Shown: in pieces, positions 1,663-40,301 of the stretch
How the letters are laid out: every line of letters starts with the position of its first letter
How positions within the stretch are numbered: position 1 is the stretch's first letter
Origin: Sminthopsis crassicaudata
Lineage: Eukaryota
Direction of reading: 5' to 3'
Assembly (NCBI RefSeq): GCF_048593235.1
Contig: NC_133620.1
Location: 48,734,852-48,798,851, forward strand
DNA: 64,000 nucleotides
Position numbers and translations under genes: made by a program
The notes under the pieces: model-generated
Seen by the model: only the letters and a program-made list of their open reading frames with translations
The model's database searches: none
What the model was told of the DNA's origin: nothing

Positions 1663-3594
1663 ATGTCTGCTCCCAAGGGCACGGCNNNNNNNNNNNNNNN
1701 NNNNNNNNNNNNNNNNNNNNNNNNNNNNNNNNNNNNNNNNNNNNNNNNNNNNNNNNNNNNNNNNNNNNNNNNNNNNNNNNNNNNNNNNNNNNNNNNNNNN
1801 NNNNNNNNNNNNNNNNNNNNNNNNNNCGCGGCGAAAAACCAGGTGGCCATGAACCCGCAGAATACGGTGTTTGACGCCAAGCGGCTGATCGGCCGCAAGT
1901 TCTCCGACCAGGTGGTGCAGTCCGACATGAAGCACTGGCCCTTCCAGGTGGTGAGTGAGGCCGGGAAGCCCAAGGTGCGGGTGTCCTACAAGGGGGAGAG
2001 CAAGTCCTTCTACCCCGAGGAGATCTCGTCCATGGTGCTGAGCAAGATGAAGGAGACTGCCGAGGCCTATCTGGGCCAGCCGGTCAGCAACGCGGTCATC
2101 ACGGTGCCGGCGTACTTCAACGACTCCCAGCGCCAGGCCACCAAGGACGCCGGGGCCATAGCCGGCCTCAACGTGCTGAGGATCATCAACGAGCCCACGG
2201 CGGCGGCCATCGCCTACGGGCTGGACAGGTCGGGCGCAGGAGAAAGGAACGTGCTCATCTTCGACCTGGGCGGGGGCACCTTCGATGTGTCCGTGCTCAC
2301 CATCGACAACGGCATCTTCGAGGTGAAAGCCACGGCGGGGGACACCCACCTGGGCGGGGAGGACTTTGACAATCGCCTGGTGAACCACTTCGTGGAGGAG
2401 TTTAAGCGCAAATACGGGAAGGACCTGAGCCAGAACAAGCGCGCCCTGAGGAGGCTGCGCACAGCTTGTGAAAGGGCCAAGCGCACCCTGTCCTCCAGCA
2501 CCCAGGCGAACCTGGAGATCGATTCCCTGTACGAGGGCACGGACTTTTACACCACGATTACTCGGGCTCGCTTTGAGGAGCTGTGCTCAGACCTCTTCAG
2601 GGGGACCCTGGAGCCGGTGGAGAAGGCCCTGCGGGATGCCCGCATGGACAAGAGCCAGATCCAGGACATCGTGCTGGTCGGGGGCTCCACCCGCATCCCC
2701 AAGGTGCAGAAGCTGCTCCAGGACTTCTTCAATGGCAAGGAGCTGAACAAGAGCATTAACCCGGACGAAGCGGTGGCTTACGGGGCGGCCGTGCAGGCGG
2801 CCGTGCTGATGGGAGATAGGTCCGAAAAGGTACAGGATCTCTTGCTCCTCGACGTGACGCCCCTGTCCCTGGGTCTCGAGACGGCAGGGGGGGTGATGAC
2901 AACGCTGATCCAGAGGAACTCCACCATCCCCAGCAAGCAGACGCAGACCTTCACCACGTACTCGGACAACCAGCCGGGAGTGCTGATCCAGGTGTACGAA
3001 GGCGAGCGAGCCATGACCCGGGACAACAACCTGCTGGGTCGCTTTGAGCTGTCGGGCATCCCTCCCGCGCCTCGGGGGGTCCCCCAGGTCGAGGTCACCT
3101 TTGACATCGACGCCAACGGCATCTTGAACGTCTCGGCCACGGACAAAAGCACGGGCAAGGCCAACAGGATCACCATCACCAACGACAAGGGCCGGCTGAG
3201 CAAGGAGCAGGTGGAGAGGATGGTGCGGGAGGCGGAGAAGTACAAGGCCGAAGACGAGGCTCAGCGGGAAAGGGTGACTGCCAAGAACTCGCTGGAGTCC
3301 TATGCCTTCCAGGTCAAGAGTGCCATGCGGGAGGACGGCCTTCGAGACAAGGTCCCGGAGGAAGACAAGAGGAAGGTGCTGGACAAGTGCGAGCAAGTCC
3401 TTTCCTGGCTGGAAGCCAACCAGCTGGCCGACAAGGAGGAGTTTGAGCACCAGAAGAAGGAACTGGAGAGGGTGTGCCAGCCCATCATTGCCCGGCTCTA
3501 CCAGGCACCTGGTTCTCAGGGAGGGAACAGCTGTGGCGCCCAGGCCCGCCATTCCCATCCCACCTCTGGGCCCACCATTGAAGAGGTGGATTAG
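1663..3594 (+). CDS. HSPA6: Heat shock 70 kDa protein, HSPA6/Hsp70B'-like, copy 1 (643 aa, intronless)
   Basis: HSP70 motifs [30 protein letters not shown] and C-terminal EEVD. HSPA6-like traits: [50 protein letters not shown] and 643-aa length. 141 N (47 codons, in frame) at 1686-1826. Carries E584 where the other copies have D. Confidence 0.92.
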
Positions 3595-3912
3595 ATGAGG
3601 GACTTTGGCTGGCTAGGGGATTGTGAGCTAATGAACAACAGGTGCACGTGCTGCTGGTGTCTCCAGAGGAAGCGTCAGCATTCTGTTCTTTTCCCAACTG
3701 CTATCTCTGGACAGCTTTGTTGTGAGCAGGTCCGCCTTTGGGCATCCTGACTTTTTGACTTTTTCTTTCAACTCTTCCCTTCTCAACAGGGGAAGCAAAA
3801 GATTGCTTATTTCGTTCTTTCTCTGACTGCCGTCAATATGTATGTTTTCTTATTTAAATCTGTTTCAATAATTTATGAGAAAATGTTTTGTATCATTTAT
3901 TTAGAATAATTC

Positions 3913-3918
3913 AATAAA
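3913..3918 (+). promoter_or_regulatory. Polyadenylation signal of copy 1
   Basis: AATAAA ~320 nt after the stop, preceded by ATTTA-rich sequence. Equivalents at 13767, 22361, 32030 and 40619. Confidence 0.75.
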
Positions 3919-37700: not shown

Positions 37701-38369
37701 CTCTTCTCCCACCCTCCTCTCCTGAGGTAGAGACTTTTCCCCGTCCCTTCCTAAAGAGGGGTGCCCGAGCACTTCATTTCAGGAGCCGATGCCTAGCTTG
37801 GGGCAGGGATGAAATCTCTGGGAAGGTCATTAAGAGATTCATTAGAACCACTCTCGCAAGGAAACACCCCTGCCTGACATGCCGCTGCCCGCGAAACACC
37901 GCGAACTTTCCCGAAGTCCTAGACACAGATCTCACTCCTATGACATCACCTTCTAGGCCCCCTCCCCTCCGTCCACTAGCTCCAGCCAGAACCGCGGAGA
38001 ATTTGCTGGAGAAGGCGAGTTCTCAGTTCTGATTGGTCAGAGCAAGCGGAGGGGGCGGAATTGCTCAAAGCGCCGGTGCCAGCTCTGGGCTGTTCAAGAA
38101 GGCGCCCGAAGGTTCCCGGGCAGAGGAGGAGGGAAGGAGGCGGGGCTGGGGCAGCTGCATAAATAGGCAGGACCTGAGCTGGCCCGGCACATCCCAGCTG
38201 AGCATCCACAGAGAGCCAGAGCTCCAGCCGCAGCAGAGAGGCACACGACCGGTCCGCGTCCTTCCTCCAGCGAGACCGAGAGCATCCGAACGTCAGCCAG
38301 CCACCTTTCTCCTGAGACTTCTGCTCCGCACTCCCGGGAAAGAGCAAGGGAAGGAGTCCTGCCGCGATC
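31712..38369. repeat. Second B-type spacer, near-identical to 13449-20111
   Basis: Background ORFs recur with identical translation at offset +18,258 (14830/33088, 15090/33348, 16588/34846, 18619/36877, 19118/37376). Confidence 0.95.
37902..38165 (+). promoter_or_regulatory. Heat-shock promoter of copy 5
   Basis: Perfect HSE 37902-37916, inverted CCAAT, proximal HSE 38092-38116, CATAAATA 38158-38165. Confidence 0.9.
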
Positions 38370-40301
38370 ATGTCTGCTCCCAAGGGCACGGCNNNNNNNN
38401 NNNNNNNNNNNNNNNNNNNNNNNNNNNNNNNNNNNNNNNNNNNNNNNNNNNNNNNNNNNNNNNNNNNNNNNNNNNNNNNNNNNNNNNNNNNNNNNNNNNN
38501 NNNNNNNNNNNNNNNNNNNNNNNNNNNNNNNNNCGCGGCGAAAAACCAGGTGGCCATGAACCCGCAGAATACGGTGTTTGACGCCAAGCGGCTGATCGGC
38601 CGCAAGTTCTCCGACCAGGTGGTGCAGTCCGACATGAAGCACTGGCCCTTCCAGGTGGTGAGTGAGGCCGGGAAGCCCAAGGTGCGGGTGTCCTACAAGG
38701 GGGAGAGCAAGTCCTTCTACCCCGAGGAGATCTCGTCCATGGTGCTGAGCAAGATGAAGGAGACTGCCGAGGCCTATCTGGGCCAGCCGGTCAGCAACGC
38801 GGTCATCACGGTGCCGGCGTACTTCAACGACTCCCAGCGCCAGGCCACCAAGGACGCCGGGGCCATAGCCGGCCTCAACGTGCTGAGGATCATCAACGAG
38901 CCCACGGCGGCGGCCATCGCCTACGGGCTGGACAGGTCGGGCGCAGGAGAAAGGAACGTGCTCATCTTCGACCTGGGCGGGGGCACCTTCGATGTGTCCG
39001 TGCTCACCATCGACAACGGCATCTTCGAGGTGAAAGCCACGGCGGGGGACACCCACCTGGGCGGGGAGGACTTTGACAATCGCCTGGTGAACCACTTCGT
39101 GGAGGAGTTTAAGCGCAAATACGGGAAGGACCTGAGCCAGAACAAGCGCGCCCTGAGGAGGCTGCGCACAGCTTGTGAAAGGGCCAAGCGCACCCTGTCC
39201 TCCAGCACCCAGGCGAACCTGGAGATCGATTCCCTGTACGAGGGCACGGACTTTTACACCACGATTACTCGGGCTCGCTTTGAGGAGCTGTGCTCAGACC
39301 TCTTCAGGGGGACCCTGGAGCCGGTGGAGAAGGCCCTGCGGGATGCCCGCATGGACAAGAGCCAGATCCAGGACATCGTGCTGGTCGGGGGCTCCACCCG
39401 CATCCCCAGGGTGCAGAAGCTGCTCCAGGACTTCTTCAATGGCAAGGAGCTGAACAAGAGCATTAACCCGGACGAAGCGGTGGCTTACGGGGCGGCCGTG
39501 CAGGCGGCCGTGCTGATGGGAGATAGGTCCGAAAAGGTACAGGATCTCTTGCTCCTCGACGTGACGCCCCTGTCCCTGGGTCTCGAGACGGCAGGGGGGG
39601 TGATGACAACGCTGATCCAGAGGAACTCCACCATCCCCAGCAAGCAGACGCAGACCTTCACCACGTACTCGGACAACCAGCCGGGAGTGCTGATCCAGGT
39701 GTACGAAGGCGAGCGAGCCATGACCCGGGACAACAACCTGCTGGGTCGCTTTGAGCTGTCGGGCATCCCTCCCGCGCCTCGGGGGGTCCCCCAGGTCGAG
39801 GTCACCTTTGACATCGACGCCAACGGCATCTTGAACGTCTCGGCCACGGACAAAAGCACGGGCAAGGCCAACAGGATCACCATCACCAACGACAAGGGCC
39901 GGCTGAGCAAGGAGCAGGTGGAGAGGATGGTGCGGGAGGCGGAGAAGTACAAGGCCGAAGACGAGGCTCAGCGGGAAAGGGTGACTGCCAAGAACTCGCT
40001 GGAGTCCTATGCCTTCCAGGTCAAGAGTGCCATGCGGGAGGACGGCCTTCGAGACAAGGTCCCGGAGGAAGACAAGAGGAAGGTGCTGGACAAGTGCGAG
40101 CAAGTCCTTTCCTGGCTGGATGCCAACCAGCTGGCCGACAAGGAGGAGTTTGAGCACCAGAAGAAGGAACTGGAGAGGGTGTGCCAGCCCATCATTGCCC
40201 GGCTCTACCAGGCACCTGGTTCTCAGGGAGGGAACAGCTGTGGCGCCCAGGCCCGCCATTCCCATCCCACCTCTGGGCCCACCATTGAAGAGGTGGATTA
40301 G
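38370..40301 (+). CDS. HSPA6: HSPA6-like HSP70, copy 5 (643 aa)
   Basis: Same as copies 2-4 except K347R (AAG>AGG at 39409). Confidence 0.92.

What the first reader, a model, noticed from the sequence alone, without database searches (positions are those of the whole stretch)
1663..40301. Five apparently intact HSPA6-like genes in tandem (dosage amplification)
Seen: five 643-codon ORFs, each with HSE-containing promoter, TATA-like element and polyA signal, spaced 9854/8595/9668/8590 bp. Established: humans have one HSPA6 plus the HSPA7 pseudogene-like paralogue, and mouse and rat lack HSPA6. Inference: lineage-specific amplification of a strictly stress-inducible chaperone, possibly for thermal or torpor stress. 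The adaptive reading is speculation.
Basis: partly seen in the sequence, partly recalled or inferred. Interest (0 to 1): 0.72.

Follow-up and report, generated by a model that had tools for sequence, protein, structure and literature searches.

The report
Five-gene HSPA6-type heat-shock array, dunnart
The window holds five almost identical, apparently intact heat-inducible HSP70 genes of the HSPA6 lineage in a row in the fat-tailed dunnart; they are old tandem duplicates kept identical by gene conversion, already annotated by NCBI and a classic kind of arrangement, but not described in any paper I could search.

Summary
Five 643-codon intronless ORFs lie at the stated coordinates and spacings. 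They differ by 0-2 nt. Each has paired HSEs, a TATA-like box and an AATAAA signal.

The window is Sminthopsis crassicaudata. The unmasked residues match RefSeq XP_074122536-40 exactly, so the five genes are already annotated.

An ML tree places them in the HSPA6 clade (100/99), not with HSPA1A/B/L. They belong to a marsupial sub-lineage that NCBI often names "1B-like".

The amplification is shared across dasyurids. Antechinus has 4 accessions and Sarcophilus has 8. Other marsupials have 1-2.

- **Old repeat units.** Spacers have K2P 0.15-0.19. About 2.7 kb (promoter to polyA site) is 99-100% identical, with 0 synonymous differences where about 60 are expected, and GC3 is 87%. This is concerted evolution by gene conversion.
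- **One very recent copy.** About 9.9 kb (gene 2 to gene 3) is nearly identical to gene 4 to gene 5. This is either a very recent extra unit or, less likely, an assembly artefact.

tRNA genes flank the array, as at the eutherian FCGR-HSPA6 region.

The parts
286..358 (-). tRNA-Gly(GCC), left flank of the array, about 1.3 kb upstream of gene 1
   Evidence: ARAGORN.
1387..1460 (+). Copy 1 proximal promoter: HSE pair at 1387-1409 and TATA-like CATAAATAGG at 1451. It lacks the distal trimeric HSE and has ATTAG at 1326 in place of the inverted CCAAT.
1663..3594 (+). HSPA6-type gene copy 1 (643 codons, intronless). E584 is the ancestral state. Equals XP_074122536 at all unmasked residues. N at 1686-1826.
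3963..11097 (.). Spacer A1 (GC 35%), with a decayed tRNA-Leu relic at 10107-10169. From 10204 on it is homologous to 421-1207, the region upstream of gene 1.
11050..11314 (+). Copy 2 promoter: trimeric HSE 11050-11062, inverted CCAAT 11179, GC boxes, HSE pair 11240-11262, TATA 11305.
11517..13448 (+). Gene copy 2, CDS identical to copies 3 and 4 (= XP_074122537/38/39). AATAAA at 13767.
13817..19692 (.). Spacer B1, 100% identical to B2 over all unmasked aligned bases. Holds an N run (14172-14334); the identical copy B2 carries a CT-rich microsatellite beside its N run (32655-33009).
20112..22043 (+). Gene copy 3. Promoter HSEs at 19645 and 19835, TATA 19900, AATAAA 22361.
22412..29360 (.). Spacer A2, with a tRNA-Leu relic at 28466-28507.
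29780..31711 (+). Gene copy 4. Promoter HSEs at 29312 and 29503, TATA 29568, AATAAA 32030. Private 3'UTR variant T at 31742.
29503..39408 (+). Near-perfect copy of 11240-21150 (about 9.9 kb). The only differences are one SNP, one 1-nt G-run indel and a 4-nt length difference inside the masked run.
38370..40301 (+). Gene copy 5 (derived R347; = XP_074122540). HSEs at 37903 and 38093, TATA 38158, AATAAA 40619.
40670..47726 (.). Spacer A3, ending in an intact tRNA-Leu(CAG) at 47644-47726 (-). This is the right end of the repeat.
49655..63176 (.). Flanking tRNA cluster: Gly-TCC 49655-49726 (+), Asp-GTC 50315-50389 (+), Ile-AAT 56604-56679 (-), Asn-GTT 63101-63176 (+).

Best explanation
This is a tandem array of five functional-looking, intronless, HSF-driven HSP70 genes of the HSPA6 lineage in Sminthopsis crassicaudata.

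Origin. The repeat unit was about 1.2 kb of upstream DNA, the gene, a spacer of about 6 kb and a tRNA-Leu gene. It duplicated long ago into four units (A1, B, A2, A3), probably before or near the dasyurid radiation. A fifth unit (a second B) was added very recently.

Maintenance. Since then, repeated gene conversion between the copies, together with purifying selection, has kept about 2.7 kb per unit essentially identical. This stretch runs from about -400 to the polyA site. The spacers and the tRNA-Leu copies have decayed. GC-biased conversion fits the 87% GC3 in a 35% GC neighbourhood.

Function (inferred from established HSP70 biology, not shown here). Stress-activated HSF1 trimers bind the HSEs of all copies. 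Intronless mRNAs escape the heat-induced block of splicing. Five templates give a faster and larger burst of one and the same EEVD-tailed chaperone, so the array acts as dosage. A published analysis finds only one HSPA1 gene in marsupials, so this array may supply the multi-copy inducible capacity that placentals get from HSPA1A and HSPA1B.
For: Anatomy:
- Five intact ORFs with shared promoter and polyA signals.
- Pfam HSP70 E=1e-238.
- The best PDB matches are full-length HSPA1A and HSPA2.
- Hallmark motifs and the EEVD end are present.

Identity:
- Exact match of the unmasked residues to XP_074122536-40.
- HSPA6 clade at 100/99.

Old units with conversion:
- Spacer K2P is 0.152-0.159 (A against A) and 0.194 (A against B).
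- The CDSs show 0 synonymous differences where 58-72 are expected.
- Identity falls sharply to 50-85% outside about -400 to +2270.
- 3' flank variants are mosaic: copies 1, 3 and 5 against 2 and 4 up to about +300 after the stop, then 1, 2 and 4 against 3 and 5.
- Derived D584 is shared by copies 2-5, while edge copy 1 keeps the ancestral E and a less homogenised promoter.
- Paralogues cluster by species (Sminthopsis 100/94, Sarcophilus 100/98).
- GC3 is 87% and CpG o/e 0.70, against spacers at 34-36% GC and CpG o/e 0.06-0.23.
- tRNA-Leu relics sit at equivalent places in A1 and A2, and the intact gene sits at the end of A3.

Precedent: HSPA1A/1B in placentals are kept alike by gene conversion plus purifying selection, and the same paper finds one HSPA1 copy in marsupials (PMC5865164).
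Against:
- There are no expression data. Heat induction and equal use of the five promoters are inferred from motifs only.
- I did not read the masked 47 codons. Their integrity rests on the length and exact flank match of the public protein models.
That the duplication predates the species splits therefore rests on spacer divergence and an assumed neutral rate.
- The non-adjacent identical B units cannot arise from one simple unequal crossover. They need two events or a long conversion.
Confidence: 0.75

Rival explanations
1. Only four units are real. The second B unit (about 29.5-39.4 kb, that is gene 4 or 5 plus spacer B2) is an assembly artefact such as a false tandem duplication or a misplaced haplotype.
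For: Over about 9.9 kb the two stretches differ by one SNP, one homopolymer base and 4 nt of a masked repeat. All other spacer pairs differ by 15-19%. The arrangement A1-B-A2-B-A3 cannot come from a single unequal crossover. Antechinus has four annotated genes.
Against: The two B units have different neighbours on both sides (A1 and A2 upstream, A2 and A3 downstream). A simple haplotig insertion would not produce that. The small differences, including a private T at 31742, show two separate consensus sequences. Duplication followed by deletion, or long gap repair between 2.7-kb identical arms, is biologically plausible in such arrays.
Confidence: 0.15
2. The five genes are young duplicates that have simply not had time to diverge, with no gene conversion involved.
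For: CDS identity is 99.9-100%. For the B1/B2 pair this reading is in fact correct.
Against: Spacers that were co-duplicated with the genes are homologous along most of their length yet 15-19% diverged. Identity drops abruptly at the edges of the transcription unit. tRNA-Leu copies inside the units have decayed.
Confidence: 0.03
3. The array is an adaptive, lineage-specific response to torpor or thermal stress.
For: Dasyurids carry 4-8 accessions against 1-2 in other marsupials. The dunnart and Antechinus are listed among torpor-associated marsupials (PMC13429303). From my own knowledge, extra hsp70 copies raise thermotolerance in Drosophila.
Against: The Tasmanian devil, which to my knowledge is not known to use torpor, has the most accessions. 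Dromiciops, a torpor-associated marsupial in that paper, has one accession in this sub-lineage and two in the sister one. A gene-family study of torpor in marsupials did not report this family. No expression or fitness data exist.
Confidence: 0.15

Closest known systems
Eutherian HSPA6 (HSP70B'), with its paralogue HSPA7 in apes
   Same: Same clade in the tree (100/99). Both are 643 aa, intronless and EEVD-tailed, with an HSE and TATA promoter. Both lie beside a Leu/Gly/Asp tRNA cluster, as at human 1q23.3 and at mouse Fcgr3 (PMC4041453; PMC6563257).
   Different: Eutherians have one gene (two in apes, from an ~80-kb FCGR segmental duplication). Here there are five units of 8.6-9.9 kb with no FCGR exon inside the 64 kb. 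The dunnart copies belong to a marsupial sub-lineage (c2). Its relation to a second marsupial sub-lineage (c3) and to eutherian HSPA6 is unresolved.
HSPA1A/HSPA1B pair of placental mammals
   Same: Stress-inducible, intronless HSP70 duplicates kept nearly identical within species by gene conversion plus purifying selection, with paralogues clustering by species (PMC5865164).
   Different: A different HSP70 lineage, separated at 97/95. It has two genes in the MHC class III region, not a five-unit array. That paper finds a single HSPA1 gene in marsupials.
Insect hsp70 clusters (Drosophila; Stratiomyidae)
   Same: Multi-copy inducible hsp70 genes that evolve in concert, with organisation differing between species from thermally contrasting habitats (PMC3071340; the Drosophila details are from my own knowledge).
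   Different: An independent origin in another phylum, and often in inverted-pair arrangements. Here all copies are head-to-tail.

Membership tests
HSP70 (Pfam PF00012) | Full-length match to the HSP70 profile, covering the nucleotide-binding and substrate-binding domains | tested here: met
   E=1.2e-238, profile positions 49-599 of 599 over the unmasked part. Motifs [22 protein letters not shown] and C-terminal EEVD are present.
HSPA6 lineage | Groups with eutherian HSPA6 rather than HSPA1A/B/L in a phylogeny | tested here: met
   ML tree of 60 rows with masked columns removed. The HSPA6 clade has 100/99 support and the HSPA1 clade 97/95. HSPA2 and HSPA8 were not in the tree; fish and amphibian hsp70 served as the outgroup.
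HSPA6 lineage | Intronless gene of about 643 codons | tested here: met
   Continuous 1932-nt ORFs. They have the same length as the eutherian HSPA6 proteins listed.
HSPA6 lineage | Position in the FCGR2/3 - tRNA cluster neighbourhood (synteny) | tested here: inconclusive
   tRNA Gly-GCC, Leu-CAG, Gly-TCC and Asp-GTC flank the array. This matches the tRNA set of the 1q23.3 unit, which in mouse lies next to Fcgr3 (PMC4041453). No FCGR Ig exon lies inside the window. Wider context could not be fetched.
HSPA6 lineage | Strictly stress-inducible expression | not testable with these tools
   HSEs are present in all five promoters.
Concertedly evolving gene array (interlocus gene conversion) | Homogenised tract with sharp edges inside older, diverged duplicated DNA | tested here: met
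   Identity is 99-100% from about -400 to +2270, against 50-85% outside. Spacer K2P is 0.15-0.19. There are 0 synonymous differences where about 60 are expected.
Concertedly evolving gene array (interlocus gene conversion) | Paralogues cluster by species although the duplication predates the species | tested here: inconclusive
   Clustering by species is seen. That the duplication predates the splits is inferred only from spacer divergence. Orthologous arrays could not be fetched.

The most novel reading that the evidence does not exclude
Dasyurid marsupials have expanded one HSPA6 sub-lineage into a copy-number-variable array of 4-8 genes. The array evolves in concert, is seeded inside a tRNA cluster and is still turning over, as the very recent extra unit in the dunnart shows. 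It would serve as their main multi-copy inducible HSP70 system, in place of the placental HSPA1A/1B pair. Copy number would matter for stress physiology such as heat, arousal from torpor, or the corticosteroid-driven male die-off of Antechinus.
Probability: 0.15. Interest if true: 0.55.

Novelty: new member of a known kind. Interest (0 to 1): 0.33.

Why it matters
The finding gives a clean mammalian example of an inducible HSP70 array under concerted evolution. The conversion tract is sharply bounded and equals promoter plus transcription unit. Decayed tRNA relics inside the units act as an internal clock.

It shows that the HSPA6 lineage, single-copy in the eutherians studied (two in apes) and reported lost in laboratory mice, was the lineage amplified in dasyurids. 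A published analysis finds only one HSPA1 gene in marsupials.

It also flags a naming inconsistency in public annotation, where members of this clade are called "1B-like". And it points to a likely copy-number polymorphism that could be used in dunnart laboratory colonies to test HSP70 dosage effects in a mammal. The biology itself (dosage of a heat-shock chaperone) is expected rather than surprising.

Tried and rejected
No Antechinus or Sarcophilus loci were obtained, there is no synteny beyond the window, and spacers could not be compared across species.
The Rfam, tRNA and tandem-repeat scans covered 1-17799 and/or 23800-64000 only.
- **FCGR exons.** I looked for Ig exons with the Ig part of a fused public model (P0046) and found none.
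- **Other ORFs.** Pfam scans of eleven spacer or flank ORFs gave nothing. The ORFs at 13895-14830 and 32151-33128 run through N runs (the latter also through a CT microsatellite), and I take them as artefacts. The 323-353-aa antisense ORFs inside the genes are by-products of high GC3.
- **Earlier findings** of this scan: nothing at this place or under these words.
- **Literature.** No paper in the library links HSPA6 with marsupials, dunnart, devil or Antechinus in a relevant way.
- **PDB scores** for the nucleotide-binding domain alone do not separate HSPA1A, HSPA6 and HSPA1L, so the tree was needed.
- **A single unequal crossover** as the origin of the second B unit is rejected on arrangement. 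It would also duplicate A2.
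Full report
**1. What is there**

The window has five + strand ORFs of 643 codons at 1663, 11517, 20112, 29780 and 38370. They are spaced 9854/8595/9668/8590 bp apart. tblastn with the unmasked protein finds exactly these five and no fragments.

The coding sequences differ at two positions only. One is 3414 (A in copy 1, T elsewhere; E584D). The other is 39409 (G in copy 5; K347R). Copies 2-4 are identical.

**2. The N runs**

Each gene carries 141 N at the same offset, running from the third base of codon 8 to the second base of codon 55.
- The run is 47 codons long, and the frame is the same on both sides.
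- Five identical runs at one codon position are not what assembly gaps look like.
- Public 643-aa proteins match all unmasked residues of the five ORFs with 0 mismatches. The number of masked codons is therefore exact, and the public models are open across them.
- I compared unmasked positions only, never printed the masked residues, and cut those columns from the tree.

**3. Signals around each gene**

- All five copies have a TTCnnGAA-N7-GAAnnTTC pair at about -277 to -255 (5 hits against 0.01 expected by chance).
- All five have two GC boxes.
- All five have CATAAATAGG 212 nt before the ATG.
- All five have AATAAA 318-319 nt after the stop.
- Copies 2-5 also have a perfect GAAnnTTCnnGAA at about -467 and an inverted CCAAT box.
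- Copy 1 lacks the distal HSE and has ATTAG in place of ATTGG.
- The predicted mRNA is intronless and about 2.45 kb long.

**4. Whose genome, and is it known**

The word search returned a 97% hit to a Tasmanian devil protein named "heat shock 70 kDa protein 6-like". Its 90% cluster holds:
- Sminthopsis crassicaudata XP_074122536 to XP_074122540,
- Antechinus flavipes XP_051855122 to XP_051855125,
- eight GenBank accessions of Sarcophilus harrisii.

The three distinct Sminthopsis proteins match copy 1, copies 2-4 and copy 5 exactly. The window is therefore fat-tailed dunnart, and NCBI already annotates five genes here.

**5. HSPA6 or HSPA1?**

PDB scores do not discriminate between them. I built an ML tree of 60 proteins (LG+C20, masked columns removed, fish outgroup).
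- All marsupial "HSPA6" and "1B-like" proteins join eutherian HSPA6 in a 100/99 clade. This clade is apart from HSPA1A/B/L (97/95).
- Within it, Australidelphia have two sub-lineages. One is c3 (named HSPA6; 98/93). The other is c2 (named "1B-like" in wombat, koala, possum, tammar and Dromiciops).
- The dasyurid genes nest in c2 (dasyurid clade 100/99).
- The order of c2, c3, the didelphid genes and eutherian HSPA6 is unresolved.
- No dasyurid c3 protein appeared among the top hits.
- Other marsupials show 1-2 accessions per sub-lineage.

**6. Old units, homogenised genes**

*Spacer divergence.* A self-comparison shows that the spacers are homologous along most of their length but diverged. 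K2P is 0.152-0.159 among A1, A2 and A3, and 0.194 between the A and B types.

*Sharp tract edges.* From about -400 (about -280 for copy 1) to about +2270 the five units are 99-100% identical. That stretch is the promoter plus the transcription unit up to the polyA site. Outside it, identity falls to 50-85% within 150 bp.

*No synonymous change.* With 421 synonymous sites, 58-72 synonymous differences per pair are expected at the spacer divergence. None is seen.

*Other conversion signs.*
- 3' flank variants form a mosaic: copies 1, 3 and 5 against 2 and 4 up to about +300 after the stop, then 1, 2 and 4 against 3 and 5.
- Derived D584 is shared by copies 2-5. The edge copy keeps the ancestral E.
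- GC3 is 87% and CpG o/e is 0.70, in surroundings of 34-36% GC and CpG o/e 0.06-0.23.
- Paralogues cluster by species.

Together these are the signs of interlocus gene conversion, probably GC-biased, acting with purifying selection. Placental HSPA1A/1B are the published precedent (PMC5865164).

**7. One very recent unit**

The stretch 11240-21150 and the stretch 29503-39408 differ only by:
- G/T at 13479/31742,
- one base of a G run at 13906,
- 4 nt inside a masked repeat.

The array reads A1-B-A2-B-A3. Only four units are old, which equals the Antechinus gene count. A single unequal crossover cannot duplicate B without also duplicating A2. Either a duplication followed by a deletion, or a long gap repair primed by the identical flanking genes, would produce this arrangement.

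An assembly artefact is the alternative, at about 15%. Two points argue against it. The two B units have different neighbours on both sides, and they carry small private differences.

**8. Origin and neighbourhood**

tRNA genes flank the array:
- Gly-GCC at 286-358 (-) on the left,
- Leu-CAG at 47644-47726 (-), Gly-TCC, Asp-GTC, Ile-AAT and Asn-GTT on the right.

Decayed tRNA-Leu relics lie at 10107-10169 (A1) and 28466-28507 (A2). The DNA just after them is homologous to 421-1207, upstream of gene 1. The repeat unit therefore ran from just after tRNA-Gly to just past tRNA-Leu.

The human 1q23.3 tRNA repeat unit holds Leu, Gly, Glu, Gly and Asp genes. Its mouse counterpart lies next to Fcgr3 (PMC4041453). 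Eutherian HSPA6 lies inside the FCGR cluster (PMC6563257). This supports conserved synteny, but no FCGR exon lies within the 64 kb.

**9. How it most likely works**

This section is inferred from established HSP70 biology.
- Stress frees HSF1, which binds the HSEs of all copies.
- The intronless transcripts bypass the heat-sensitive splicing step.
- Five templates raise the rate at which one identical chaperone accumulates.
- Copy 1 may respond more weakly, because it lacks the distal HSE and the CCAAT box.

Nothing here tests expression or benefit. The torpor idea gets no support from the devil, which has the most accessions and, to my knowledge, is not known to use torpor. A marsupial study of torpor-related gene families does not list this family.

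**10. Limits**

- Copy number, expression and cross-species spacer orthology remain open.
- No paper in the searchable library describes this array.

**Verdict**

It is a dasyurid-wide, already annotated array maintained by gene conversion. It is a new member of a well-known kind and of moderate interest.

Noticed in passing
286-358; 47644-47726; 49655-49726; 50315-50389; 56604-56679; 63101-63176: Six tRNA genes (Gly-GCC, Leu-CAG, Gly-TCC, Asp-GTC, Ile-AAT, Asn-GTT) bracket the HSP70 array. The Leu, Gly and Asp genes match most of the tRNA set (Leu, Gly, Glu, Gly, Asp) of the human 1q23.3 tRNA repeat unit, whose mouse counterpart lies next to Fcgr3.
   Followed up: partly
10107-10169 and 28466-28507: Decayed tRNA-Leu(CAG) relics (87% and 90% identity over 63 and 42 nt) lie at equivalent places near the ends of spacers A1 and A2. 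The original repeat unit therefore carried a tRNA gene, which survives intact only at the array's end.
   Followed up: yes
50789-51006: A 218-nt N run lies among the tRNA genes, 400 nt after tRNA-Asp. I did not examine or fill it. The ORFs that cross it (50695-51213 on the - strand, 50765-51136 on the + strand) are artefacts of the N run.
   Followed up: no
32655-33009 (spacer B2), next to the N run 32434-32654: A CT-rich imperfect microsatellite, (TCTGTC)n and related periods, abuts the masked run in spacer B2. B1 is identical from 14397 on, so it should carry the same repeat. The two masked runs differ in length (163 against 221 N), and the true sequences differ by 4 nt there. The 311- and 325-aa ORFs crossing them are not genes.
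   Followed up: partly
Public proteins P0026, P0027, P0133-P0135 (koala, wombat, Dromiciops, tammar, possum): NCBI names these proteins "heat shock 70 kDa protein 1B(-like)", but they fall inside the HSPA6 clade (100/99) as the closest relatives of the dasyurid genes. This is a naming inconsistency in public annotation.
   Followed up: yes
One search hit list: No dasyurid member of the second marsupial HSPA6 sub-lineage (c3, present in wombat, koala, Dromiciops, tammar and possum) appeared among the best 120 hits. It may have been lost in dasyurids, or it may be unannotated.
   Followed up: no
2587-3558 (-), 1327-2388 (-) and the equivalent places in copies 2-5: Long antisense ORFs of 323-353 aa lie inside every HSP70 gene. 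I read them as by-products of the 87% GC3 coding strand, not as genes.
   Followed up: no
Sarcophilus harrisii proteins P0023, P0121, P0125, P0126, P0130-P0132: Eight GenBank accessions (seven distinct sequences) all lie on one 479-Mb record, but the accession numbers are not consecutive. Whether they form one array could not be checked.
   Followed up: no
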